Positions 24,016 through 44,700 of a DNA stretch of 57,223 bases are shown here, piece after piece. Location of the stretch: NCBI GenBank assembly GCA_900088475.1, contig FLMG01004416.1, positions 1-57,223 on the forward strand, in the 5' to 3' direction. The notes below the pieces were generated by a model. The model made no database searches, was not told the DNA's origin, and worked only from the letters and a program-made list of their open reading frames with translations. Both the position numbers and the translations under genes were made by a program. Positions within the stretch are counted from its first letter, which is position 1. Each line of letters opens with the position of its first letter. The DNA is from Hyphochytrium catenoides (lineage: Eukaryota; Protista; Hyphochytriomycota).

Positions 24016-25869
24016 ATGGGAGCCTTTTCTCCTTTCTCCCGCTCACCTTCTCTTTTGATTGCCGCCGTAGCCTCCCTTCTCCTTCTTGGCCCAGAGCAGT
24101 ATGTCAGCGCTCACTCCTACTTAGAGTGTACTGACCTGCGGGCAGATGGCTGCTATGGGTTCCCCCGTAACTACCAGTTCACCAACAAGGAAGGAGAAGG
24201 CTACGCCTACGTCCAAGCTCCTGATGCCCCTGCCTGCAGCCCTAAGACACAGCCTCTTCTATCTCCAATCCAAGGCTCCTACAAAGACTTTCCTATGGCT
24301 AAGGCAAAGGCTGGAAGCCCCCTCACACTTCAATGGCAGGCTAACAACCATGAGCCAGCCAACCTCCCAGGCCGCAGTGTTATGATAAACTACATCCCCA
24401 AGCCAACTCAGACAGAGGATCCTCCTCAGTCAGAGTTTAACAAGCATAAGGTAGCGACCCTACCTTTTGGTGCGACGAAAGAGGGATCGGAAGTTGTCAC
24501 CGTGTGCAATAGTGATCCAGAGCCGAACAAGGTGTGCAAGGGAACTTTCCAGCTCCCTTCCAATATGCAGCCTGGTGTCTATACCTTTCAATGGTGGTGG
24601 GAGTTTAACTCTAACTATGAGAAAAAGGGTTATCCCGAGGTCTATACTTCCTGTTTCGAAGTGGAGATCCTAGGGGCCGATGGCAAGCCTTATGCGGCGC
24701 CGCCCAAGGTTCCTCCTCATGGTCCAAAGCACCAGCAGGCTATGTGGCAGCAAGGGCAGGCGGGCCAGCAAATAGCTAACCAAGATAAGCAGTCGGACGC
24801 AGACGGCTATCAGGTACAGGAGGGTGTCAAAGATGACCTTAGCTATGCACCGCCAAAGCAGAACATTGCTGACGGCACTGAAGACGGCTATGGGACGACA
24901 AGCGATAACGCTGTGGAGCAGCTTGCGCAGCAGCAATCGGCCCAACAGGTAGCCACTCAACAAGCAGCAGGGCAAGGAGAGGGCCAGCAATACAAGCAGC
25001 AGCACCCGTCCGCAGGGCAAACAGCTGTCCAGCAGCAGGAACAGCAGCAGGCGGCCCAGCAACAGGCAGCTCAACAGGCTAGCCAACTGAACCACTCGGC
25101 TGAAGTAAGAGAAGAAGACGGAGATTGCGATGACGAGAAGACCGAAGAAGAGGCCATACCCATCCTTGGACAGACCTCTTCTGAGAGCCAGGATCCTTTG
25201 GCCACCCCCAAGCGCGACGCAGTCACTCCTGATGACTACGTCCATGAGAAAGCTGACAGCACAATGCCGGCGGCTCCTGAGGAAATCACGAGTCAGTACG
25301 CTGCAGGAGAATCATCAGAGCTACCCATCAATGAGGCAGAGGGCGCAGATTACGAAAAAGATGACCAGGAAGATTACGACAATCTTGATAGCAAGAGTGA
25401 GTTCGAGGATGAACTAGAAAGAGTAGAGCAAAAGGAGCACGCAGCGGCAGTAGCGCCAGCACAGGCAGTAGAGCAAGCACAACCTGCTTCCCCAGCAGGA
25501 GTTGGTATCATGCCAGAGCAATCAGCAGCACTCGACACGATGCCAAGTGAATCTGAAGGAGAGGCACAACAGGAATCTATGGCAGCTGGGTCCGACTCGT
25601 CGGCACAGGCAGGCTTGACAGGTGGACCGGTCGCAGCAGACGGGTATCTGGAACCAACCGATGCTGTCCAGGATCCTGTTGTTGGGGCTCCAGCAGCTCC
25701 TCAGCCAGGTAATCTAAGGGGAAGCTCTGAGCCTTGCAAGGCGAACCTAGAGGGAAGAAGCAATGACCAGGAAATGGAGAAGCTGAAGCAGACTTTTACT
25801 GCCTTCATGGCAGACCTGGCGAAGCTCTATAAATCTTACTTCCCTGATGGTCAGATGCCAACTTTCTGA
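24016..25869 (+). CDS. Secreted His-brace LPMO-like (DUF7492-like) protein with a long Gln/Ala/acidic tail, single exon
   Basis: 617-aa ORF. The hydrophobic signal peptide ends at VSA|H, exposing His33. Other motifs: GFPRN, PMAKAKAGSPLTLQWQANNH (second His), PGVYTFQWWW and EVYTSCFEVEI, followed by about 400 aa of low-complexity tail. Confidence 0.85.
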   Translation: MGAFSPFSRSPSLLIAAVASLLLLGPEQYVSAHSYLECTDLRADGCYGFPRNYQFTNKEGEGYAYVQAPDAPACSPKTQPLLSPIQGSYKDFPMAKAKAGSPLTLQWQANNHEPANLPGRSVMINYIPKPTQTEDPPQSEFNKHKVATLPFGATKEGSEVVTVCNSDPEPNKVCKGTFQLPSNMQPGVYTFQWWWEFNSNYEKKGYPEVYTSCFEVEILGADGKPYAAPPKVPPHGPKHQQAMWQQGQAGQQIANQDKQSDADGYQVQEGVKDDLSYAPPKQNIADGTEDGYGTTSDNAVEQLAQQQSAQQVATQQAAGQGEGQQYKQQHPSAGQTAVQQQEQQQAAQQQAAQQASQLNHSAEVREEDGDCDDEKTEEEAIPILGQTSSESQDPLATPKRDAVTPDDYVHEKADSTMPAAPEEITSQYAAGESSELPINEAEGADYEKDDQEDYDNLDSKSEFEDELERVEQKEHAAAVAPAQAVEQAQPASPAGVGIMPEQSAALDTMPSESEGEAQQESMAAGSDSSAQAGLTGGPVAADGYLEPTDAVQDPVVGAPAAPQPGNLRGSSEPCKANLEGRSNDQEMEKLKQTFTAFMADLAKLYKSYFPDGQMPTF

Positions 25870-27044: not shown

Positions 27045-27123
27045 NNNNNNNNNNNNNNNNNNNNNNNNNNNNNNNNNNNNNNNNNNNNNNNNNNNNNNNN
27101 NNNNNNNNNNNNNNNNNNNNNNN
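27045..27123. other. Assembly gap (79 N)
   Basis: Run of N. Confidence 1.
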
Positions 27124-27570: not shown

Positions 27571-27603
27571 AGAAGAGAGACAGAGGAGGAGAGAGAGAGA
27601 GAT

Positions 27604-27650
<47 letters not shown>

Positions 27651-27797
27651 AAGAGAGAGAGAGAGGGAGAGAAAGAAAGGAAGAGAGAGAGAGAGAGAGA
27701 GAGAAAGAAAGAGAGAGACAGAGAGAGACAGAGAGAGACAGAGAGAGACAGAGAGACAGAGAGAGACAGAGAGAAAGTAAAAAAGAGAGAAAGAGAA
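27571..27797. repeat. Compound (GA)n/(GAGAGACA)n microsatellite
   Basis: Visible GA tract about 300 bp upstream of the phosphatase-kinase gene. Confidence 0.95.
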
Positions 27798-28099
27798 GTT
27801 GGGCTGTCTTATTGTCTGTTTCCTTGTCAATACTCTGCTTCGCAAGGCAGAAAGGCTGTGATTCTCTTGCTGTCCTGGATCTTCATAGGAGTCACAGGAA
27901 GGCAGCGAGGCAACGTCTCGTCAGGTTCATCTTCAATATCAAAATCGGCGCGCCTGCTGCTCGTCGCCTGGGGCTTTCCTTTCCCACCCTTCCATTCTCT
28001 GCGTACCTGTCGAATGAAGCTTATTAAGCTCTGAGTCCCACGGCAGAGGCCACTGCTTGCTGACAGAGTCGGCTGCAGGCTGACCTGACAAGGAGGAGG

Positions 28100-31000
28100 A
28101 TGTACCTCCATCGCCTAGGAAAGGCAAACGTACAGCCTTTCATTGGAATAAGAAGGCGCTGGCACATTTGTTCGTCATTCTCTTCATCCTCTAGCTCTTC
28201 CTCATCGTCGTCGTCATCTTCTTCTTCATCTTCATGGAATCGTCACAGTGGCAGCAGCGAAGAGGAATCCTCGTCTTCGGTTCAAGTCCATGAGTTCGAC
28301 GCCCCGCGGATGGTAGATCTGGTGCTTGTGAGGTAACCTTAAGCAATCACCGAAGGGCCGGAATGACATGGGGAAGGCAGCAAGAGTGAGAGAAGAGAGA
28401 GCGAGAGCGAGAGAACATGGAAGAGAGCAGAGCTTAAGGGATAAGAGAGGACGCAGGGAGACAGATAGGAAAAGAAAGAGAGAGACAGAGGGAGAGGAAG
28501 ATGGAATACCTGCACTGCAATCTCTGCGATCCTTATGGTTATTGTCTTCCTCCAACCCCCAGACATGGTGAGAGTGAGGGCAATGTGGCGCGCAAGAGGT
28601 CTGTTTGTTATTGGCAGCTTGCGAATCATTTTCTCTTCTCTCTCCGATGTCTCTCTATGAAGCGACCTTAGTCTTACACACAGACTCGTTTGATGCCTCT
28701 CCTTATCGCCATTTCTTCCCTTCTCAATGGTCTCCACTCCTTCCTCTCTCTCGCTGTCCTCTCTCTCTTGCTATCTCGTCCTCTGTCTATGTCAGTCTTG
28801 CTCTCTCACTTTGTCTCAACTAATATGAAGAATTGTGCTATCAGGTCGATGCTTGGCGATCATAGTCTTTACACCGGAGAGTTCATGCATCGTCACAGCT
28901 CTAAGTGGAGACTGACAGACCGCGGCCGAGAGCAAGCAAAGGCCGCAGGCCAAGTAAGCTGCAGACGCTTTCGTTAGCCTGCTTCATCTTCTCTTCTACT
29001 CTTTCTCCTTCCTTTTTATTCTGAAGACGCTTTCATTAGCCTGGTCATGGTCACCGGGTCCTCCCTGTAGCTGTCTAGCTTTTGACTTCATTAACATTTG
29101 CTCGGTCTGGGCGCCTATCAATCAATTGCTAGAAGTTTCTCTCTCTTATAGTCTTCTCTCTATGCCCTCCCTTCTCTCCCAGTGGATCAAGCAGCAGATA
29201 TCCCCAACCTTCGACCGCTATTACGTTTCCGAGTTCCTCCGCGCTTGGGAGACGGCTGCGTACATGCATCTCCCCGGAGCGCAGTGGTTCAGTGACTTCT
29301 ATATCAGAGAAAGGTAGGGAGCGAGAGAGTGGGAACTTAGAGAGACACCTGACAAATAAAACCATAAGACACACAGACACGCACACACAGAAAGAGAGAG
29401 AGAGAGTATAACGGTGACATTATTAACGTTTTGTGCCTAGTAGAGGCTAACCTCTTTCTTGCTCTTTTATTCGTTCGCTCGTGCTTCCCTTTCCTTCTCT
29501 TCTCTTATTTGCCACTACCACACTGCACGGTTTCTTTGTGTTCCCGCTCATATGTATCACAGGGATTGGGGGCAGATGGACTTGATGTCTCAGAATGAGC
29601 GGATAGAAAAGATGGGAGATGAGCTCAGAGTAAGTTAAGAGACCAAACAAGCAGGAGCATAATCGGCCATACGAACCCTACCATGTCCACGATTTAGCTG
29701 TGATATTACCCAGTAATTTACCCTATCTTGGTAACTTCTTTGGCTGTCTAGTTGTTTTCTTATCTGCATGAGCGCTGGTCTTCTGTATCCATTCATCTTT
29801 CTCTCACCTGAACAACGGTGAAGGTCTCGGCTATGCCTAACAGTGACTTTTCCTTGTTTCCCCAACATGCGTGGATTGGTCTTGCAGAGAAGAGATCTGG
29901 ATCGCTTTTATTATGCGCCTCCTGGTGGCGAATCGTTGGCTGACGTTGCTCAAAGAGCAGATAGACTAGTTGGTAAGTGCTATGACTGTCCTCATCCTGG
30001 GCCTGCATGCCCGTAGGAGTTCTCCTACCTGTTAATGCCCTGTTCCTTCGTAAGTTCTCCACCGAGCTCCTTTACATGTACTAGACTTTCCTTGGGAGGC
30101 ATATGCAGCTACTCAAGTGTCACTATGGCTCATTGCTCTGTTCTTACCAAATAGAGATCTTGCATCGAGAATGCGCTGGGAAGAAAGTCATTGTCGTCTG
30201 TCATGGAGAGGTAATGTGGGCGCTACGTACCCGCATCGAGCGGATGAGTCAAGTGAAATTTAAGGACCTTCAGGTACGAAGGGGAGGAAAAGAAAGAAGA
30301 TGTGGGGAGGGTTGAGTTAGGGAAATCGGCGGATCAGTTGAGAAGTACGTTTCTAGGGAAACACCATGTACGGGGATGGTAAGAACTAGCAAGGGGCACT
30401 ACCTGCGCACGTAGAGATAAGAGAGGGAATAGAGGACTGGACTGGGTGCTTCTTACGTGTAGCCTAACCTGCGGGTGTAGGAGGCTGGAAGGATGGTGGA
30501 TCAAATCCACAATGGCCATATCTTGCACTACACGCGTCGACACCCTGAGACGGGAGAGATACTACCCTTTTTCTCCTATCTGCGCTCAGTATGTCCCTGG
30601 AACATGAAGCTCTCCCCTGCGGTAAGTAGCACTTGCTCCTCCGGTCCATTAATCTCGTTCTCTTAGTTGCGATTCTCGTCTACTTGGTCCGGATCTCCAC
30701 TTCTTCGTAGACTTGGGAGAAGATAGAGCGTCCAGTGTACGATAATAAGATGCTGCTGGCAGAAGCAGAAAGAGTGCCAAGAATGATTATCTCTGAATCC
30801 GAATTTTTCCGAGGTGGGTTTGCACTTTCCCCACCTTGAAAGCAGACCGTAGCGTACTTTGTTCCATGAAATGTTATTAGGGGTTCTATGCAGAGAGCCC
30901 GCCCACCGCCATCTGAATTTCTTTTGCTGTGTAGTCACTCTCTCTCCCTACAACACATACCTTCCTCCAACCCCTCAACACCAACCCCTCAACTGAAGTT

Positions 31001-34000
31001 TCACGACCAATATGTTTCTTGTTCCCGTCACGCTATGGTGGTAAAATATAGATCCTGAAGACAAACAGGCAAGAGCAAAGACACGGTCAACTCCTCCCCA
31101 GCCTGCTCCAACGAGTACCTCTCACTCTTGGAGCGACCCTGGCACCACATACCCTCTCATAGCTGAGAGCCTTCCAAAGGGAGAGCCGCTAGAGATGTCC
31201 AAAGTGCGTACAAATAAGTGGTATATGCGTATAAGTGGTTAGAGGGAGGGTTGGCCGCAGGTTCCTTCCCAAAAGCTACCGCTCACGTTCTCGCTTTCTA
31301 TCTTGCTCTATTACTCCTAGCTTTGTCTTCTATCGACGGAATAACCACGTTGTTCATCGTCCATGTGTGGGTTACTTTTTATCCTTGACCCACACTACAT
31401 CCCACCTAACTTTCTTCGGTACATTCGGCTATTTTCTGCCCTTCTAGGTCCTTCTTGTGGCAAAAACAACGCGTTACGAGCATGAAGTGGAGCGGCTAGG
31501 AGACTCGTGAGTCGCTTCCTTGCTTGTGACATCTTCCTTGTTCGTCTCACGCTTTCCTCTGCTTCCCTCTGATTATCCTGTTATTGGTTTTCTCCTTAAC
31601 GGCCCTCAGCGTCAGTGAGGAAAGGCTAAGAAAGGAAGTGTCGATGCGGGGATTCGTTTACGAGCGCCTTCGTCGCATCCATGAACAGCATAAGCTTGCC
31701 ATGGACGATATAATGGAGACGTAGGTTAAGGGGCCGAGGAAAGCGTGGCCTCTTCTAGCGAGAAGGCAGCTAGAGTCCGAGAGTTTGTATGGACAGGATC
31801 TTTCAAGAGAACTAATAGTTACTGGCGGGAGGTGCAGAAGGAGGAAGATGAGGTTAAAGACACACTTGAGTCGAGCACATACAATCAACGGACAAGGAGC
31901 GAAGTCCTCATCCGCGGCTCGGCGCGAGCCAATGTTCTCATTTCTTCTCTCACTGTCGGTTAGGTTTGCCAGAAGGAATGTGGAGGTGCACTACGTCCCC
32001 AGTCCTCATCTGAAGGATGATGATGTTGGAGACTACGACGTCGTCTTTGCTGCTGGAGGAGACGGGACCTTCCTCAAGGTACGAGGAGATTAGCTGACTG
32101 ATGCCCATCTAGGACAGAAAAGAGGAGAGGGATGGTAGAGCTGAGGGATTAGAGAGAGAAAAGAAGCATGAGAAAATATTACTCTCAGGCAAAAGGCTTT
32201 CAAGAGTTCCTTGTATGCATAGTAGTCAAAAGGAAGAATATAGCTACTTAAGGCAGAAGGAGATCACTTCTGAGATCCTTTCATTTCTCGATAGGCTGCA
32301 AGTTTTGTTCGCTCTCCTATCCCAGTCATTGGCATAAATACGGATGTCAAAAGCAGCGAGGGTCGGCTCTGCAGCTGCTGGATAGACCCCAGCCAGAACT
32401 CCTTTGAAGACGTATTCAATAAACTTGTGAACGGTGAGTGCATTGTGCTTGGGCATACAGCGTCTTACTGGGATATACCCTAAATGAGCTGGGATTTGTA
32501 CCCTCCGGGCTAGACATCAGCCCAGGACCTTGTGACTGTACTTCTGTGTTAGCGTTGTCGCGCGATAGCTCTCTCGGCCCGTAGTCTATCTTATGGGTAG
32601 CTTGTGCTTAGACTATTATCTGGTCCTACCAGCATATCTAAGGACAACGGCATCTCCTTACAGGCGACTTCTGGTGGCTGATGCGACAGCGCATCAAGGT
32701 GATCCTTGTGCATCCAGACGGGACCAAGGTCTACATTCCCTATTTTGCACTTAATGAGGTAGCCGCAGGTTCCGCAGTGATGCAAGTTCACGTGTGTCAA
32801 GTAATTCTATTTTGGCACAGGTCTTTATTGCTGAGAGTGATCCAGCGCGGCCTGTGGTTCACGACGTAGGAATCGACCACAAGCAGCGAGAGATAGAAAG
32901 AAGCAGCGGTATTATTGCTTGCACAGGCACAGGGTCGACGGCCTGGTATTACAGTGCTGTACGTAGTCTCCCAAATCCCTAGCAAGCTGATATTGCGCTT
33001 CCCATGTGTTCTCCATTGACGACGACAATGTATTTCTCTACGTCGCTACCCCACCCCTCTAGTCGTGCATGCATAGGGAGCAGGTGCTAGCCGTACTGGA
33101 TGCTGCTGGACACAATCACCCGCCAGATGTGGTGACGGAAATCACCGAAATGTACGTGTTCCCTGCTTTGCTGCGTGGTCTTTCTTGAACATGGAGTCTG
33201 CCGTAGCCAGAATTGCTATCCTCTTGTCCTTGACCTTGTGATTTCCACCTTTCCCATATCCTCTCGCTACCGACGTTCTGTTCCTTATTCTTGTTGTCTG
33301 CGCCTTACTGTCTTCTCTACATATCGATATATCATTGTTTCACTCTATTATGCACACTCTGTCTAGGTTGAACGAGAGGAATGTATTCCCAGAAAACAGT
33401 CCTGAAATGGGTTATATCGTCCGCGAGCCCATCGTCAACTCCACCTTTGGCGATATCAGGAACCGCAGGTAGGCAGCTAGAATTTATACGATACGATGTT
33501 GACGTTGGTGAAGCGGGGCCGTTATGGAGTACCAGGATCTAGCGGCAGTTGAAGGAAAGTAGAGGACAAGTAAGATGCATTAGAGGACGTGTCAGGTAAA
33601 AGTTGAGGGCATGTAAGATAGACAGTTTTGGGGTCTTAGAAGGAGGAAGTAGCAAAGATAGATGGGTCTGCTGCATGTCTATGAGACACAGTACCATTTA
33701 AGAGTCGAACGGCGTCTTCTCCAAACAGTGGCCGAGCTCGACGGATCTCCGTCAAGTCTTTGGGCTGGGATACAATCCTGACGATGGATGGGATCAAAAC
33801 TATTCCTTTAGGATACGGCGTACAGGTAGTGCCATTGGAAGATTGCGGTTTCTGGGTAGATTAGTACACGCTATTGGCCCTATATCCTTTCTGCTCGCCG
33901 GTCTCATTGTCTCCTTCTTCCGAGGACTGGGTGTCACTTAGACCGCTGTCCTTTAGTTCTTCAGCGTTTCTTAGTATTCCCGGTATCTCTTGATAGGCAC

Positions 34001-34174
34001 CCTGCTGTCTCTTCAGTGTTTCAACTTTGATGTGTTTGCTATCTAAACGTACCTTCCGTTCTGCAGGCAGTCTTGAAGACCACTCAAGATCCTGAGTGCA
34101 TTTTGAAGACTGTTTCTTTTGAGGAGCCTACGATGGCATCCAGAAGGAAACGAATGTTTCATTCTGTCCGCTAA
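28100..34174 (+). CDS. Fusion protein: histidine phosphatase (PGM/FBPase-2 superfamily, branch 1) + NADK2-type NAD kinase, with a putative mitochondrial presequence; about 19 exons
   Basis: Spliced in frame through GT-AG introns. Phosphatase motifs: LVLVR|HGESEGN, LTDRGREQA, VSEFLRAWETA, IRERDWG, PPGGESLADV, VVCHGEVM. After a linker, kinase motifs: VAKTTRYE, AAGGDGTFL, PVIGINTD..SEGRLC, ALNE|VFIAE, SSGIIACTGTGSTAW, VREP. Stop TAA at 34172-34174. Confidence 0.9.
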
Positions 34175-35739
34175 AAACAGAGACTCACCGCGCAGAGCAG
34201 CAGAGCCAACAAACAGATGATTCTCTGTAAAAGAGTGGACCACCATTAGCGAGAAGTAGAGTGCGTTGTTAGCAGATTATTTATTGTTTAGGATAGAACT
34301 TTGAGAGGCAAGGTATAGTGGATCGTGACCAGCCTAACAGTGGAAAGCCTGGCCTGACAGGAATCACAAGGCTTGAGAAAAGACGTCATAATTCCAGCAG
34401 CCATGCAAGGCATTTTAAGCATGGGCTCGTGGAGGCTTTAAGAGGCTTCAGTCCCGTAACCTTGTATTCATCTTGGTCTTTCTTCCAGTCAACCTCTCTC
34501 TCTTTCTCTCTCCTCGTGTCCTCCCTAAGATTCCTGTCTGATTCACGACAAATGTCTGTCATGCTAGTTTCCGACCTTTACATATGAGAGGAGCCGTGGC
34601 TTCAACGGTACAGGGAGGAAAGGAAGAATGGCCGGCAGGCTGAAGGGGATGAGGAGCAGTCCCGCAGCTGAGGTGGAGAGCAGAGATGGGGCTAAGGCCG
34701 ATGGTAACCACCAAGCGTTGCTATTGAAGACAGTCAGACAAACCGCTGCCAATGGTGTCAACAAGACCCTGCCGTCGCTGAGGACAAGTACAAGCCTAGT
34801 GTGCAAAAATTAGAATGCGACCTCAATGTGCAAGATCTAACAAGCGATAGACTCGTTCTCGTTGGCTGCGGCACTCTTAGGCGGGTGTTCAAGTGTCTTA
34901 CGTTCAATTACATGAGAAGCTGCGCATAGACTATAAAACGCCTTAGCCTGAGTAGCCACTGACGAGACGCGGCTTTGACTATTATCTTGACCTCGGTATT
35001 GCCACCATAAGTAAGGACTTGCAGGCAGGACTTCAAGCTTCAGTCGGGCGTACTTCTCTGCCAACCTCATTATGCAGCAGATCAAGGCAGAGGAACTCAA
35101 CTCAGGAGGCACTCGATTGAGTGTGTCACAGGCGATTCTTCTCATGCAAATCAATGCTCGAGCAGCATCAGAAAGACTGCCTAGGAAAGGTACAAAGCAC
35201 CGACACACGCTGTCTAGCGGCTGCTCCCGCGCCGAACATCTAGAAGATAAGATGAAGCGTCTTTGCAAAATTATGTCGCTCAAGTGTAAGCACCCTAATG
35301 TCTCCAAGCCTCACTGAAAGTCTGCGTTCTTCTTTGTTTTTCAGCCTCTATAACGCTACTACTGCGCACCGAGAGAACAGCTGAAGAGCAGTACGGGACA
35401 ATGGGCTGGAGTTTAAACTAGGAATATAGACAGACAGAGAACAGAGATACACCGAGAATGCTAAGGAAATGCCAGAAGCCACACAGCTTTGCGAAGTGAA
35501 GTCACAAGTGGAAGGGGGATAATAGTAGTAGACAGTGGTGCCAACTCTCCCACAAAGCGTCATGGACCAGGATAGTTAGGATCGGCAAACCAAAGCAACC
35601 TGCAGAGTCAATACTACTGACGCCTAGGCTTCGGCTCTCCCCTTTTCCACGTTCCGATCTCCTTCTTCTCTTTGACGCCTCTGCTATGGGAATGGTTGAT
35701 ATAGAGTCTACAAAAGCTTGACTAACACATACAGTACGG

Positions 35740-37385: not shown

Positions 37386-38439
37386 CTAGTCTTCAGCCAG
37401 CTGAGCTGCGTCTTTCAGCACATTTCTATAAGATTGTCGCCATGCCATAGCTTTCTCTCGGTCTCCCTTCGTCACGGCGCTGAAGTCTAACTTTTCTAAG
37501 GATGGAAGCGTACTTATGACAAACTTGCGATAATGCTTCTTCTCCTCAATAGGGTTTCCATGCAGTGTTAGATTCCGCAACTTCGCTAACTTCGCCAAGC
37601 TCTCAATGTCTCTCAATTTAGTGATATCATTGCCGTGAAGGTTGAGAGTCACCAGTTCAGGGAAAGAGTTGAATGACTGTGCGGGCGTGGGGTTTGAGGC
37701 GCGGGAGTTAGAGCACAGCCTTGTTTTGAGATGAGAAGCAAATGATAATGAAGAAGGGCAGAGAAGGACGCACGGCCGCGAGCACCTTGTGAGATGGGAG
37801 ACAGAGAGAGAGAGACCAAAAACAAGGGCTATCAAGCGAACAACGAATGGGGGCGGCCAGCGAAAAAGAGAGCGAGTGCCGTTGTAGTTCTTGACGACAA
37901 GTAGTGGAAGCGATCGTCTGATGCAAGAGGCTACCTTGCCAATGGTGGAGATTTCGTTGCAAGAGAGATCCACCCAGTGCAGTAAGGAAGCCTCGCCCAA
38001 CACTGCGGTCACTCCTTCAGCCAGGGAGTCCAGTTTCTGAATGCGATTGTTATCAAGCTTGATGGCCTTCGTTTTCTTATGACCGCTATCATGGCCCTGC
38101 GCTTTGGCGGGAGACTGCATACGTCGCAGATGTTAGCTGGTATGTGATGGCGAGCCAATATGTGGCTAACCTGGGTTCCTGTGGAGTTTGTTTGAGCAGA
38201 TGCCGAGTCAACATTCCGGGTGCCAATCTTGGGCTCTAACCGTGCTATGACTGTGAAAGCGCGGTGATGCGAGTCAGCGCTGCATTCGTTCTAAAGCTTA
38301 TCCCCAGAGTACACATACCAGCAGGATCTGTAATTTCCATGAACGAGTAATCTAGCGGGGGCGCATGGTCACTGATCATCGCTTGAGAAATCCTGACGCC
38401 TCGAGCGGCACCGGCATCGCCCTTCTTGGGACTTTGCAT
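37386..38439 (-). CDS. LRRC51: LRRC51-like small leucine-rich repeat protein (4 exons)
   Basis: APPLDYSFM N-terminal motif, IKLDNNRI, WVDLSCNEI, LNLHGNDI, LTLHGNPIEEKKHYRKFV and LDFSAVTKGDR. Three GT-AG introns keep frame. Confidence 0.85.
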
Positions 38440-41750: not shown

Positions 41751-44700
41751 ATGACTCTCCACAGAGAAGTTCCATTTCTTACCTCTGACCATGTCCGGTC
41801 GTGGGTGACGAAAGAGCTGGGTCGGCCATCCTACATGGAAGATGAGAGAGCAGGAGGTAGGTAACGGAGCTAGTGGCAGAAAGATTTTGAGCTCGCAGGT
41901 TTGAAACTATTCTGATTTACATCACTGTTGTTTCTTTGTAGATCTGCAGAATGCCATTCATGGCAAGATTGGCTCGGGCATATTTGTGATGGGAAGTAGC
42001 CATAGGTTCATAAGGTATGAACTAGGCGCTGTTGTCTCGTTCGCTTGTCTTAAGCCTATCTCTCAACCAACTACGGTCACATCTCTACGCTCCGCATCCT
42101 CGTTCGCGCTAAGTCACCTTTGGAGTCGTGGACTATTTGCTTTAAGCTGATAGCACCTTTGACATGGTCATTTTACAGCTGGAAGGCCCATGGAGACATA
42201 GTAGAGCTTATTGACGCCTCCACCAAAGGAGCGAACCATGCCGCGGGCCACCGCATCCGCTTTCCTGGTAGGACATCATGAGTAATTGCCATAAGCTAGA
42301 GAGTGAGCGCAACTGCAAATGAGAGGAGAATGAATAGTGTGGAGACTTGGCAGAGTGGAGATGGGTAATGGATGAAAGGTAACTGATTGCTTAACTCCTC
42401 TTCATCTCCAGACCCTATCCTGCACCAAGGTGTTGCACTATTTGACGATGAGGAGCAACGACAAATTTGTTTGTGCGCAGTCACCATCTCAGATGTTGTG
42501 CATCGGTAAGGAAACATTGTAAACCTTCTTGCCTCACCTTTCGTCTTTCGTCCTCACTGACTGAGACGCTCACCTGCATTAAGATTTGTCTAACTCTACG
42601 TCATGCTCTTCTCCTGTTCAACTTCGGTTCTCTCATCAGGCTCTTCTTCCCATACGACTCCTTGATGGACTCGAAACATAGTCAGACTTCGATCTTCTCA
42701 GGTAAACACCGAACCTCCATCCAGCTACCTGTTCTGCGTATACGCCGTCGCCTTTCTAACGCGTAGCACCAAGACTTGCCTGCCTTTTCTACCTAATAAG
42801 AGCTTCATTGTATCCCAGTTATCAGGGCACCCACTCACCACGTCTTTCTTGCTGCTGGATACCATGTTTGTTTGTTAGATGAAGTTATCTCTTCCGTCAG
42901 CACCTTCTCCTACAATGTGAAGGATGTCTCCTCCGATGCCTTCTTGACCGTCGCCTCGTGGGTGAGCCCCTATCACTGCTGTCTGGGAATCTCCAAAGGA
43001 GGAATCATAGATATCAGATTTGGGATAGCGACAGGAAACGAAGCGCGGGCAGACCAGGTCTGAAAATCTGGCCTGTAAAGCGATTTCTTTCTCTTAGTTT
43101 CCATTCTTCCCTACTCCGCTCTTTCTGTGCTCAATTATTGAAAAGTCGTCAGACCATGCTCACTGGAGGATCGACGAGCAATCACTTTAAACGCCGAGCA
43201 GTGCTTCTTTTGTCGAAACAGAACCTACCAGCTGTTACTTGACCTCTCCCCTAATAGTCCCATTGTCTCCACAGATAACTATTCAGGAGAAGTCTACTGT
43301 GCTACGTCTATGGTCAGGGTTCGGGCGGCAGCAGAGNNNNNNNNNNNNNNNNNNNNNNNNNNNNNNNNNNNNNNNNNNNNNNCTGCATTCTATCTAAGAG
43401 CTATGCCGCGGATGTCTCTGGATTATTGGGGTTTGAAGGGAAGACCAGACACCGTGTGGCTCTCAGAGCGCAAAGAATAGAAACCCAAGAGGGAGACGTG
43501 GAAGAGTATTTTCTGCTTCTCTCTGTGACGCATAGACCAGAGGTTTTACTTTATAGAGGTATCCGTACCATTCTCGCGTGACCTGACATCTCATTACGTC
43601 CTAGCGCATATGGCGTTCTTCTCAATTGAGTCACTCACACATGCAGCGACCCTTGGCATAAGTAACTTCCTCGACAATGTTCTCAGTGGGAAGCCCGCTT
43701 GTTAATCTTGCTTCACTTCTCTTTCCTGTCCTTCCCACCTTCCATGTACTCATTCGCTGCTTCTTATCCCTTTCTCCATCGCTTCTCTGGCCCATGTCTA
43801 GGGATTGCGGAAGGAGAGGAAGAGCATAGTCTCTCTCTTGTTAGGAAATTTCAGTTTGGACGAGAGCTCCTCAAAGAGCCTACAGGGGGCGGAAGAGGAA
43901 AGACTGAGCCAGTCCTTATCGATTTTTCACTTCAGGAAGGTCATCTTCACACTCTTTGGTCAGGCGAACCGCTTCCCGAAAGTGATTTCTACCAAGGTCG
44001 TGAAGCAGAGCTCCTTCCTCCCTCTTTCACTGTCACGTTCTGGAACGCGTTGTCTCCAGACTCCAACAGTGAGGAACCGCCCAGAGAGTCACATCACCTG
44101 TGCCTCTATACGGAGTATAACCAGAAGTACTTGGAGGATGACTCCATGTCTTACTTCCTCTTCTCGCCAGAAGATGAACGAGAAGAGAGCCAGCATTACA
44201 CAGCGGAGAGCATAAACGCTTGGTATCTCTCCCGCCTTCTCCTCCCGAATAGGTTCCCGGTGTCCGTCATCCTGCGCGCACTTCGAGCGTTTTCGGCTGA
44301 TCCTGAGCTTATATCGGAGGACGAGGTTTCCTCTCCAGAGCGGTTTGAGCTTGCTATCGCGGAATGTGTAAGGCAGAAACTAGGGGATGATTGGACGCTC
44401 TCAGATCTGAGAGCAGAGTGGCGAGAGCTACTTTCTCTCTGTTCGTCGTTGTTGAGGAAAGAACTTCTTCCTGTCGGCCTACTGAATACCGCAAGCTCTT
44501 CGCTGTTTCCTCTCCCATTGGTTGTCAGAGCGAAGTCTATCTCTGCTCTGTGGCCCGTTGGTGAAGGTGAATGGGAACATGCCCCTAAAGCAGTGCTGGA
44601 GGAAGAGAGAGCGGCTGGAAGTATACGTGAAGAAAGCGAGGCGCTTCTGTCTCTCGCTAAACAGCATGCCCAGATGTTTGGCCCGCTGGTGATGGACACG

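What the first reader, a model, noticed from the sequence alone, without database searches (positions are those of the whole stretch)
28100..34174. Histidine-phosphatase / NAD-kinase fusion: candidate bifunctional mitochondrial NAD<->NADP(H) switch
Seen: one reading frame, spliced through canonical GT-AG introns, joins a histidine phosphatase domain to a NAD kinase domain via a Pro/Ser/Thr linker exon (~31052-31203). The phosphatase keeps its catalytic set (RHGESEGN, the RA..TA Arg, the RE..DWG Glu, and CHG). The kinase has GGDGT, NE, the TGTGSTAW motif and NADK2-type KTTRYE and INTD..SEGRLC segments. The N-terminus (MYLHRLGKANVQPFIGIRRRW + poly-Ser) is basic and free of acidic residues, like a presequence. 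Known: PFK-2/FBPase-2 pairs a kinase with this same phosphatase superfamily to run opposing reactions; archaeal MJ0917 is a bifunctional NAD kinase/NADP phosphatase but uses an inositol-monophosphatase-type domain; animal NADK2 has no phosphatase domain. Inference: this could be an independently evolved, organelle-targeted enzyme that both makes and removes the 2'-phosphate of NADP(H). I do not know of a characterised protein with this architecture.
Basis: partly seen in the sequence, partly recalled or inferred. Interest (0 to 1): 0.8.

Follow-up and report, generated by a model that had tools for sequence, protein, structure and literature searches.

The report
Phosphatase fused to mitochondrial-type NAD kinase
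One intron-rich gene really does join an intact histidine phosphatase to an NADK2-type NAD kinase; the same fusion is conserved in water moulds, haptophyte algae and other protists and has never been studied, and bacterial gene neighbourhoods independently tie this phosphatase to NAD kinase, so it is a good candidate for a missing NADP(H) phosphatase.

Summary
Twenty exons (28100-34174, + strand, all GT-AG) give an uninterrupted 742-aa protein. It has a basic N-terminal extension, a catalytically complete His_Phos_1 domain, a disordered Pro/Ser/Thr linker (exon 10) and an NADK2-type NAD kinase.

The model aligns end to end, at 55-60% identity and without gaps at domain exon junctions, with annotated oomycete proteins. 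The fusion also occurs in haptophytes, 'Rmarinus', a euglenid transcript and MMETSP transcripts. In Saprolegnia a single ORF spans phosphatase, linker and the first kinase strand. The architecture is therefore not unique to this genome. It sits in databases under automatic names, but I found no paper describing it.

New evidence: the phosphatase half belongs to a distinct subfamily of ~268 aa. Its standalone bacterial members (mostly Patescibacteria, 52-61% identical) lie, in 5 of about 35 loci, inside NAD-salvage operons. Two of them are directly beside a classical NAD kinase. This supports a pyridine-nucleotide substrate, most likely NADP(H), independently of the fusion.

Still untested: the transcript in this organism (no RNA run was listed), mitochondrial targeting and both activities. 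The scan had not noted this fusion before.

The parts
28100..34174 (+). Whole coding region: 20 exons, 742 aa, fusion of histidine phosphatase and NADK2-type NAD kinase
   Evidence: all introns GT-AG, open frame; 55-60% identity over the full length to oomycete orthologues.
28100..28332 (+). Exon 1: start codon, basic N-terminal extension (aa 1-25), poly-Ser run (aa 26-45), and the start of the phosphatase core (LVLV, first two bases of R78)
   Evidence: An in-frame stop lies just upstream, at about 28061-28063. The N-termini of orthologues are presequence-like.
28563..28598 (+). Exon 2: RHGESEGN nucleophile motif (H79)
   Evidence: The motif is conserved in 25 of 27 fused relatives.
28845..28953 (+). 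Exon 3: subfamily-specific RHSSxWRLTDRG segment
   Evidence: invariant in the bacterial standalone homologues too.
29183..29313 (+). Exon 4: EFLRAWETA (R146) and RER (E169, the acid/base residue)
29563..29629 (+). Exon 5: DWGQMD... segment
29888..29972 (+). Exon 6: RFYYAPPGGES segment
   Evidence: His_Phos_1 profile positions 107-129, E 0.019, on this exon alone.
30155..30273 (+). Exon 7: VVCHGE motif (second catalytic His, H237)
   Evidence: His_Phos_1 profile positions 134-169, E 0.0037. Also.
30481..30621 (+). Exon 8: subfamily-specific C-terminal extension (IHNGHILHYTRR...RSVCPW)
   Evidence: conserved in both fused and standalone members.
30711..30813 (+). Exon 9: end of the phosphatase module (W..IERPVYDN..LLA..ERVPRMI)
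31052..31203 (+). Exon 10: Pro/Ser/Thr-rich linker. Its length and sequence vary among orthologues.
   Evidence: The equivalent stretch in the P0043 model has pLDDT below 50.
31448..31506 (+). Exon 11: first NADK2 strand, VLLVAKTTRYEHE
   Evidence: aligns to RVVVVAKTTRYEFE of human NADK2.
31610..31720 (+). Exon 12: NADK2-specific helical segment. A tandem acceptor allows a start at 31610 or 31616.
31964..32078 (+). Exon 13: GGDGT motif (32055-32069)
   Evidence: NAD_kinase N profile positions 71-86. Also.
32295..32433 (+). Exon 14: PVIGINTD..SEGRLC, an NADK2-type segment
32664..32758 (+). Exon 15: ALNE motif
32821..32958 (+). Exon 16: TGTGSTAW glycine-rich motif (32923-32946)
   Evidence: NAD_kinase_C, E 0.0031. 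This exon was the query for the phmmer job.
33063..33151 (+). Exon 17: kinase C-terminal domain
33367..33468 (+). Exon 18: GYIVREPIVN segment
33729..33825 (+). Exon 19: RRISVKSLGWD..DG segment
34067..34174 (+). Exon 20: C-terminus and TAA stop codon

Best explanation
SHOWN. A single 20-exon gene encodes a 742-aa protein with four parts. The first is a basic N-terminal extension free of acidic residues. The second is a histidine-phosphatase (branch 1) domain of about 270 aa with all catalytic residues (R78, H79, R146, E169, H237). The third is a disordered linker of about 50 aa. The fourth is an NADK2-type NAD kinase with GGDGT, NE and TGTGSTAW. It is the local orthologue of a conserved eukaryotic fusion family and branches just outside the sampled oomycetes. 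The phosphatase half belongs to a distinct subfamily. Standalone bacterial members of that subfamily recur inside NAD-salvage operons, next to classical NAD kinase genes.

INFERRED. The protein is imported into mitochondria. There the kinase half makes NADP(H) from NAD(H) plus ATP. The phosphatase half removes the 2'-phosphate of NADP(H), or of a very close NADP-derived molecule, through a phospho-histidine intermediate. One polypeptide would then set the organellar NAD(H)/NADP(H) ratio, in the way PFK-2/FBPase-2 sets fructose-2,6-bisphosphate. How the two activities are kept from idling against each other is unknown.
For: - Gene model. It aligns colinearly over its full length with oomycete proteins at 55-60% identity, with no gaps at exon junctions inside the domains.
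- Domains: P0014, P0019 and P0029 carry His_Phos_1 (84-94 bits) plus NAD_kinase. More than 30 fused proteins have both Pfam domains precomputed.
- One polypeptide in relatives: the Saprolegnia ORF L001:2929-4125 spans phosphatase, linker and the first kinase strand. Four MMETSP 'type:complete' transcripts encode the 692-aa fusion.
- Catalytic motifs of both halves are conserved across stramenopile, haptophyte and other members.
- The phosphatase half is more conserved than the kinase half (49-55% against 30-40% identity between distant members).
- Kinase type: human NADK2 7r4j at E 3e-50, against 2.6e-9 for classical NADKs.
- Independent link to NAD kinase: standalone homologues (52-61% identity) sit in operon-like clusters with ADP-ribosylglycohydrolase, NUDIX, NAPRTase, NadD, PRPP synthetase and NadE. 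They are directly adjacent to an NAD kinase in L002 and L005, and share a cluster with NadD-NADK fusions in L010 and L019 and with a separate NADK in L013.
- NAD genes are the only recurrent pathway theme among neighbours; a translational GTPase (LepA/BipA type) also recurs in 5 loci.
- None of 49 control loci with generic histidine phosphatases has an NADK.
- About 0.6 such loci are expected by chance, against 5 observed.
- Presequence-like N-termini occur in most fused orthologues and are absent from the bacterial forms.
Against: - There is no transcript evidence for this organism; no RNA run was listed.
- No enzyme assay exists for any member.
- Only 5 of about 35 bacterial loci show the NAD cluster, and those five are not phylogenetically independent.
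- The nearest solved relatives of the phosphatase act on sugar or acid phosphates (FBPase-2, dPGM, PspA, CobC), and none is close (at most 24% identity, TM about 0.5).
- No histidine phosphatase is known to act as an NADP phosphatase.
- AlphaFold gives no fixed pose between the two domains (pTM 0.53).
- One lineage (P0014, P0041) has replaced the nucleophilic His (RPG, RAG) yet keeps the domain, so catalysis is not always required.
- Targeting was judged by eye and by composition only.
Confidence: 0.5

Rival explanations
1. The fusion is real, but the phosphatase acts on a different NAD-related phosphoester. Candidates are 2'-phospho-ADP-ribose (from NADP breakdown), ADP-ribose-1''-phosphate, or NaMN/NMN. 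Its role would then be salvage or clean-up rather than a direct NADP(H)-to-NAD(H) switch.
For: The bacterial operons are salvage and recycling clusters: ARH, NUDIX, PRPP synthetase, NAPRTase, NadD and NadE. In such clusters several phosphorylated intermediates could need a phosphatase. In L010 the gene overlaps a nucleoside-2-deoxyribosyltransferase-like gene by 4 nt.
Against: The only partner that recurs in both eukaryotes (as a fusion) and bacteria (as a neighbour) is NAD kinase, and the kinase classes differ (NADK2-type against classical). That points at the kinase's own substrate and product pair.
Confidence: 0.25
2. The phosphatase domain is mainly a regulatory or ligand-sensing module for the kinase, for example binding NADP(H) or a sugar phosphate, or dephosphorylating the kinase itself. 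It would not be a metabolic NADP(H) phosphatase.
For: P0014 and P0041 have lost the nucleophilic His (RPG, RAG) and changed the CHG motif, yet keep the domain at 58% mutual identity. Some members of the histidine-phosphatase superfamily are protein phosphatases (PGAM5, Sts-1; my own knowledge).
Against: 25 of 27 fused proteins, and all 20 bacterial proteins aligned, keep every catalytic residue. The standalone bacterial proteins have no kinase attached to regulate.
Confidence: 0.12
3. The phosphatase is a generic sugar-phosphate or acid phosphatase, and its fusion to NADK2 has no pathway meaning.
For: The best solved-structure matches are FBPase-2, dPGM, phosphoserine phosphatase and glucosyl-3-phosphoglycerate phosphatase. 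Most bacterial loci (about 30 of 35) show no NAD genes nearby.
Against: The fusion has been retained across very distant eukaryotes, with the phosphatase half the more conserved one. NADK adjacency is far above chance (about 0.6 loci expected, 5 observed) and is absent from 49 control loci.
Confidence: 0.08
4. In this organism the two halves are separate genes or transcripts, and the joined model is an artefact of reading through introns 9 and 10.
For: There are no RNA data for this genome. The linker exon is poorly conserved. Retaining intron 9 would end the frame soon after the phosphatase (ORF 30735-30839). An ATG (M390) lies 3 codons before the kinase core.
Against: Exons 9, 10 and 11 join in frame with canonical splice sites. 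All close orthologues are fused. Saprolegnia encodes the junction in one ORF, and MMETSP transcripts cover both halves. M390 is not conserved.
Confidence: 0.03

Closest known systems
Human mitochondrial NAD kinase NADK2 (C5orf33; PDB 7r4j, 7n29)
   Same: The kinase half is of this type. The orthologue P0043 matches 7r4j at E 3e-50 over the whole kinase, including the VVVAKTTRYE strand, GGDGT, NTDP.RSEG.LC, ALNE, TGTGS.AW and VREPI.N. The N-terminus is presequence-like.
   Different: Animal NADK2 and other holozoan relatives (Caenorhabditis, Phallusia, fishes, Syssomonas, Pigoraptor) have no phosphatase domain. Here about 340 extra N-terminal residues carry a histidine phosphatase.
6-Phosphofructo-2-kinase/fructose-2,6-bisphosphatase (PFK-2/FBPase-2)
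   Same: It is one chain carrying a kinase and a histidine-phosphatase-fold phosphatase that could run opposing reactions. The FBPase-2 domain is the best solved sequence match to the phosphatase half (1c7z, E 1.5e-10).
   Different: The kinase domain is unrelated (NADK fold here, not the 6PF2K P-loop fold). The domain order is reversed (phosphatase first). Identity to the bisphosphatase domain is only about 22-24%. The substrate is presumably a dinucleotide rather than a sugar bisphosphate.
Archaeal MJ0917-type bifunctional NADP phosphatase/NAD kinase (NCBIfam NF010678)
   Same: The proposed pair of activities is the same, and the phosphatase is also N-terminal to the kinase.
   Different: The NF010678 profile matches only through its kinase part (profile positions 338-480 of 570). 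The phosphatase here is His_Phos_1, not inositol-monophosphatase fold, and the kinase is NADK2-type rather than the classical archaeal type.
Known NADP(H) phosphatases: Nocturnin and Arabidopsis CCR4C (EEP fold), MESH1 (HD fold)
   Same: The proposed reaction is the same: NADP(H) to NAD(H) plus phosphate. Organellar location (mitochondria for Nocturnin, chloroplast for CCR4C; papers listed) parallels the inferred targeting here.
   Different: The fold and chemistry are unrelated: here a phospho-histidine intermediate with no metal. None of those enzymes is fused to a kinase.
Uncharacterised standalone histidine phosphatases of about 268 aa from Patescibacteria and other bacteria (e.g. P0130, P0117, P0195)
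   Same: They are 52-61% identical over the whole module. This includes the RHSS.WRLT insert and the C-terminal SVCPW...RP.Y.N..LL extension. The eukaryotic domains nest among them in the tree.
   Different: They are not fused and have no presequence. Some are encoded beside a classical NAD kinase in NAD-salvage operons. JGI labels many of them 'NAD+ kinase' although they lack a kinase domain.

Membership tests
Histidine phosphatase superfamily, branch 1 (Pfam His_Phos_1, PF00300) | RHG motif carrying the nucleophilic histidine | tested here: met
   RHGESEGN at aa 78-85. It is aligned with the motif in 25 of 27 fused relatives and all bacterial homologues.
Histidine phosphatase superfamily, branch 1 (Pfam His_Phos_1, PF00300) | The rest of the phosphate pocket and the acid/base residue: a second Arg, a Glu, and a second His | tested here: met
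   R146 (LRAWETA), E169 (RERDWG) and H237 (CHGE) are present in the model and invariant or nearly so in A1 and A2.
Histidine phosphatase superfamily, branch 1 (Pfam His_Phos_1, PF00300) | Profile match above the Pfam gathering score | tested here: inconclusive
   The spliced window protein has no reference, so only single exons could be scanned. Exons 6 and 7 gave colinear hits below threshold (15.1 and 17.4 bits; cutoff 21.7). Relatives at 35-55% identity score 84-94 bits, and orthologues at 55-60% identity carry precomputed PF00300.
Histidine phosphatase superfamily, branch 1 (Pfam His_Phos_1, PF00300) | Phosphatase activity through a phospho-histidine intermediate | not testable with these tools
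   This needs an enzyme assay.
NADK2-type (mitochondrial clade) NAD kinase | NAD kinase catalytic motifs: GGDG, NE, and a glycine-rich T/SGTGS motif | tested here: met
   GGDGT at aa 480-484, ALNE at aa 562-565 and TGTGSTAW at aa 600-607. They are conserved in the family.
NADK2-type (mitochondrial clade) NAD kinase | Closer to NADK2 than to classical or cytosolic NAD kinases | tested here: met
   The orthologue P0043 (60% identical to the window protein) matches 7r4j at E 3e-50. The best classical NADK scores 2.6e-9 and human cytosolic NADK 2e-4. The window model also hits NADK2 of holozoans.
NADK2-type (mitochondrial clade) NAD kinase | Mitochondrial location | not testable with these tools
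   Only composition could be examined. There is no acidic residue in the first 53 aa and there are 6 K/R. Orthologues have similar Arg/Ser/Thr-rich extensions. No targeting predictor is available here.
MJ0917-type bifunctional NADP phosphatase/NAD kinase | Inositol-monophosphatase-fold phosphatase domain fused to the NAD kinase | tested here: not met
   NF010678 aligns only over its kinase part. The N-terminal domain here is His_Phos_1.
PFK-2/FBPase-2 | N-terminal 6-phosphofructo-2-kinase (P-loop) domain | tested here: not met
   No 6PF2K hit was found. The PDB matches to PFKFB chains cover only their bisphosphatase part (chain residues about 250-395). The kinase here has the NADK fold and is C-terminal.
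Nocturnin/CCR4C or MESH1 NADP(H) phosphatases | EEP (exonuclease-endonuclease-phosphatase) or HD catalytic domain | tested here: not met
   The three complete fused relatives scanned against Pfam (P0014, P0019, P0029) show only His_Phos_1 and NAD_kinase families. The precomputed Pfam domains of the fused orthologues are essentially the same two families.

The most novel reading that the evidence does not exclude
NADK2-type kinases can prefer NADH (plant NADK3; my own knowledge). If this kinase half does, and the phosphatase half prefers oxidised NADP+, the fusion is not a futile cycle. It would be an ATP-driven transhydrogenase on one chain: NADH + ATP gives NADPH, and NADP+ gives NAD+ plus phosphate. 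The net result moves reducing power from NADH to the NADPH pool in mitochondria. The histidine-phosphatase subfamily, bacterial standalone members included, would then be a previously unrecognised, widespread class of NADP phosphatase.
Probability: 0.15. Interest if true: 0.85.

Novelty: new variant of a known kind. Interest (0 to 1): 0.65.

Why it matters
Enzymes that turn NADP(H) back into NAD(H) were long missing. They were identified only recently, and only in a few lineages (Nocturnin, MESH1, plant CCR4C), and none belongs to the histidine-phosphatase fold. Two independent genomic associations link this phosphatase subfamily to NAD kinase: fusion to NADK2 in many protists, and operon adjacency to classical NADK in Patescibacteria. 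That makes it a concrete, cheaply testable candidate for a new class of NADP(H) phosphatase. It may also be a single-chain regulator of the mitochondrial NAD/NADP balance, or an ATP-driven transhydrogenase. The family occurs in all sampled oomycetes, which include major crop and fish pathogens, and in bloom-forming haptophytes, but not in the animal NADK2 sequences recovered here. It also exposes an annotation error: standalone phosphatases labelled 'NAD+ kinase'.

Tried and rejected

2. Whole-protein searches with the window's own spliced protein. It has no reference and I did not type it in, so I worked exon by exon, with exon 16 in the large phmmer search, and then with database orthologues. 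The spliced model was compared locally in scripts.

3. Literature. Five term combinations were tried: NAD kinase + histidine phosphatase + fusion; NAD kinase + NADP phosphatase + phosphoglycerate mutase; NADK + His_Phos_1; oomycete + NAD kinase + phosphoglycerate mutase; and NADP phosphatase + histidine phosphatase. None found a description. Two NADK phylogeny papers do not mention a phosphatase domain.

4. Pfam on single exons gave only sub-threshold, colinear hits.

5. ESM Atlas feature search with P0043 gave no usable hit.

6. The fold search of the phosphatase model found the generic His_Phos_1 fold only, with no close solved relative.

7. The AlphaFold model of full-length P0043 gave no defined inter-domain interface (pTM 0.53), so I dropped the idea of arguing for substrate channelling from structure.

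8. An iterated NADK profile search over all 90 fetched bacterial loci found no further NADK neighbours beyond the five clusters.

9. My first guess, from memory, that the phosphatase belongs to the plant AT74 / yeast Det1 group was not tested and is not claimed.

Full report
**1. What is in the window**

Reading 27800-34500 and translating all three forward frames let me chain 20 exons. The script checked them. Every intron begins with GT and ends with AG. Introns are 62-260 nt long. The phases are consistent, and the joined 2229-nt CDS has no internal stop. It ends at TAA 34172-34174.

An in-frame stop lies just upstream of the first ATG at 28100, so that ATG is the earliest start unless an unseen upstream exon exists. 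The product is 742 aa.

There are two small corrections. Exon 9 ends at 30813. Intron 11 has two in-frame acceptors 6 nt apart, so exon 12 starts at 31610 or 31616. The orthologue alignment fits the downstream acceptor slightly better.

**2. Is the model real?**

The spliced protein has no reference, so single exons were scanned against Pfam. Exons 6 and 7 hit His_Phos_1 at consecutive profile positions. Exon 13 hit the NAD_kinase N domain, and exon 16 hit NAD_kinase_C. Each hit is below threshold, as expected for pieces of 28-46 aa.

Among 40 hits, three long proteins (P0014, P0019, P0029) carry both His_Phos_1 (84-94 bits) and NAD_kinase.

A word search with P0014 returned more than 30 proteins with both Pfam domains. 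They come from:
- oomycetes: Aphanomyces, Saprolegnia, Pythium, Lagenidium, Globisporangium, Phytophthora, Peronospora, Hyaloperonospora, Peronosclerospora;
- haptophytes: Diacronema and Prymnesium;
- 'Rmarinus' (EukProt);
- MMETSP transcripts and metagenomes.

Local BLAST of the window model against these gives 55-60% identity over residues ~63-738 to the oomycete proteins (bit scores up to 805). A multiple alignment shows no gap at any exon junction inside either domain. The model is therefore correct in all essentials.

A tree of the phosphatase domains places the window protein as sister to the sampled oomycetes (SH-aLRT 99 and 100). That agrees with earlier notes of this scan that the genome is a water-mould-like stramenopile.

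**3. One polypeptide?**

No RNA run was listed for this stretch, so the transcript in this organism is unverified and read laying could not be used. Relatives settle the point for the family:
- In Saprolegnia diclina a single uninterrupted ORF (L001:2929-4125) encodes the whole phosphatase, the linker and the first kinase strand, VVVVNKMTRYQHE.
- Four MMETSP transcripts marked 'type:complete' encode the 692-aa fusion.
- An Entosiphon (euglenid) transcript starts inside the phosphatase and runs through the kinase.

**4. The two halves**

The kinase half is NADK2-type. The orthologue P0043 matches human NADK2 (7r4j) at E 3e-50 over the whole domain. The best classical NADK scores 2.6e-9. GGDGT, ALNE and TGTGS(T/S)AW are conserved across the family.

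The phosphatase half keeps R78, H79, R146, E169 and H237, as do 25 of 27 fused relatives.

Between distant members the phosphatase half is more conserved than the kinase half (49-55% against 30-40% identity). One lineage (P0014, P0041) has RPG or RAG in place of RHG but retains the domain.

The nearest solved sequences are the FBPase-2 domain (E 1.5e-10), dPGM, TIGAR, PspA and CobC. An AlphaFold model of a standalone member (pLDDT 86.7) finds only the generic fold in the PDB, with TM about 0.5 and at most 24% identity. No characterised close relative exists.

An AlphaFold model of full-length P0043 shows two confident domains. Residues 1-58 and the linker 338-366 are disordered, and pTM is 0.53. 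No fixed pose between the domains is predicted.

**5. New evidence on function**

Searching with the phosphatase half alone found more than 1000 proteins of about 268 aa that are 52-61% identical over the whole module. The match includes the subfamily-specific RHSS.WRLT insert and the C-terminal SVCPW...RP.Y.N..LL extension.

Named members are from Patescibacteria (Buchananbacteria, Uhrbacteria and others). A genome scan added Saccharibacteria, Doudnabacteria, Collierbacteria, Planctomycetota, Armatimonadota and more.

In five independent loci out of about 35 (L002; L005, which is the same as L006 and L007; L010; L013; L019) the gene lies in a same-strand, tightly packed cluster. The cluster holds ADP-ribosylglycohydrolase, NUDIX, NAPRTase, a NadD-like adenylyltransferase, PRPP synthetase and NAD synthetase. 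L005 also has a nicotinamidase-like gene.

The kinase partners in these clusters are as follows:
- The unannotated neighbour directly upstream in L002 (5092-5904) and directly downstream in L005 (6941-7762) is a classical NAD kinase. It has a GGDG motif, NCBIfam NAD-kinase matches at E 2.5e-20 and 5.6e-23, and only NADKs among its PDB hits.
- L010 and L019 carry NadD-NADK fusions in the same cluster.
- L013 has a separate NADK.

All-against-all clustering of neighbours shows that NAD genes are the only recurrent pathway theme. A translational GTPase of the LepA/BipA type also recurs in 5 loci. None of 49 control loci with generic histidine phosphatases has an NADK within 8 kb. About 0.6 such loci would be expected by chance, against 5 seen. 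The five are not fully independent, but gene order differs among them.

This phosphatase subfamily is thus tied to NAD kinase twice, and to two different kinase classes. That points to the kinase's own substrate and product pair.

**6. Origin**

In the quick tree the 25 fused eukaryotic domains form one group (SH-aLRT 81). A standalone Nematostelium (Amoebozoa) transcript is their sister (96). Both nest inside the bacterial radiation when the tree is rooted on generic phosphatases. The simplest reading is one transfer from bacteria, followed by fusion to NADK2 and addition of a presequence. The backbone support is weak, so this is provisional.

**7. Targeting**

The first 53 residues have no Asp or Glu and six Lys/Arg, followed by a poly-Ser run. 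Most fused orthologues have Arg/Ser/Thr/Ala-rich extensions of 30-80 aa. The bacterial proteins start 6-7 residues before the RHG motif. Mitochondrial import is a reasonable inference, but no predictor was available.

**8. Comparison with what is known**

The design resembles PFK-2/FBPase-2, a kinase plus a histidine-phosphatase fold. However, the kinase here is unrelated and the domain order is reversed.

It resembles MJ0917 in its proposed pair of activities. However, the MJ0917-type profile matches only through its kinase part, and the phosphatase fold differs.

The known NADP(H) phosphatases (Nocturnin, CCR4C, MESH1) have other folds.

No paper in the searchable library describes this fusion or a histidine-phosphatase NADP phosphatase. 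Databases carry it only under automatic names.

**9. Verdict**

The architecture is real, conserved and widespread, so this gene is one more member of an uncharacterised family rather than a unique invention. I rate the NADP(H)-phosphatase reading at about 0.5, with a different NAD-related substrate as the main rival. Interest is 0.65. Earlier notes of this scan held nothing on this fusion.

Noticed in passing
proteins P0077, P0081, P0082, P0099-P0198: JGI names dozens of standalone bacterial His_Phos_1 proteins of about 268 aa 'NAD+ kinase', although they have no kinase domain. The label was probably carried over from the eukaryotic phosphatase-NADK fusion.
   Followed up: partly
window 31608-31616: Intron 11 has a tandem (NAGNAG-like) acceptor. 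The AG pairs at 31608-31609 and 31614-31615 are both in frame. The downstream one removes two residues and fits the orthologue alignment better.
   Followed up: partly
P0014 and P0041 (MMETSP and metagenome relatives): The nucleophilic His of the phosphatase is replaced (RPG, RAG) and the CHG motif is altered, yet the domain is retained at 58% mutual identity. This looks like a pseudo-phosphatase lineage within the fusion family.
   Followed up: partly
L010:1-1104 and L019:2947-4350: Patescibacterial NAD operons encode a single protein that joins a NadD-like nicotinate-nucleotide adenylyltransferase to an NAD kinase. This is another fusion in NAD metabolism.
   Followed up: partly
L002:6822-7766, L010:6947-7900: A radical-SAM protein of about 315 aa sits immediately downstream of the standalone phosphatase in two of the bacterial NAD clusters. 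Its role is unknown.
   Followed up: no
P0196/P0229 (Nematostelium gracile transcripts) and P0026 (Entosiphon sulcatum): An amoebozoan has an unfused copy of the phosphatase that is sister to the fused clade. A euglenid transcript carries the fusion. The patchy spread across eukaryotic supergroups suggests either an old origin or transfers.
   Followed up: partly
window 27045-27123 and 43337-43382; 27587-27703: Two assembly gaps (runs of N) are present. Long GA-type microsatellites lie just upstream of the gene; they translate as ERERER... and produce spurious ORFs on both strands.
   Followed up: no
window 24016-25869: The upstream neighbour is a 617-aa single-exon ORF with a signal-peptide-like start and a Gln/Ala-rich tail. 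Another first-stage note (s1-354462) flags it as LPMO-like. I did not examine it.
   Followed up: no
window 37386-38120 (- strand): A 244-aa ORF has leucine-rich-repeat-like segments (LDLSCNEI..., LNLHGNDI..., LTLHGNPI...). It is probably part of a downstream gene on the opposite strand.
   Followed up: no
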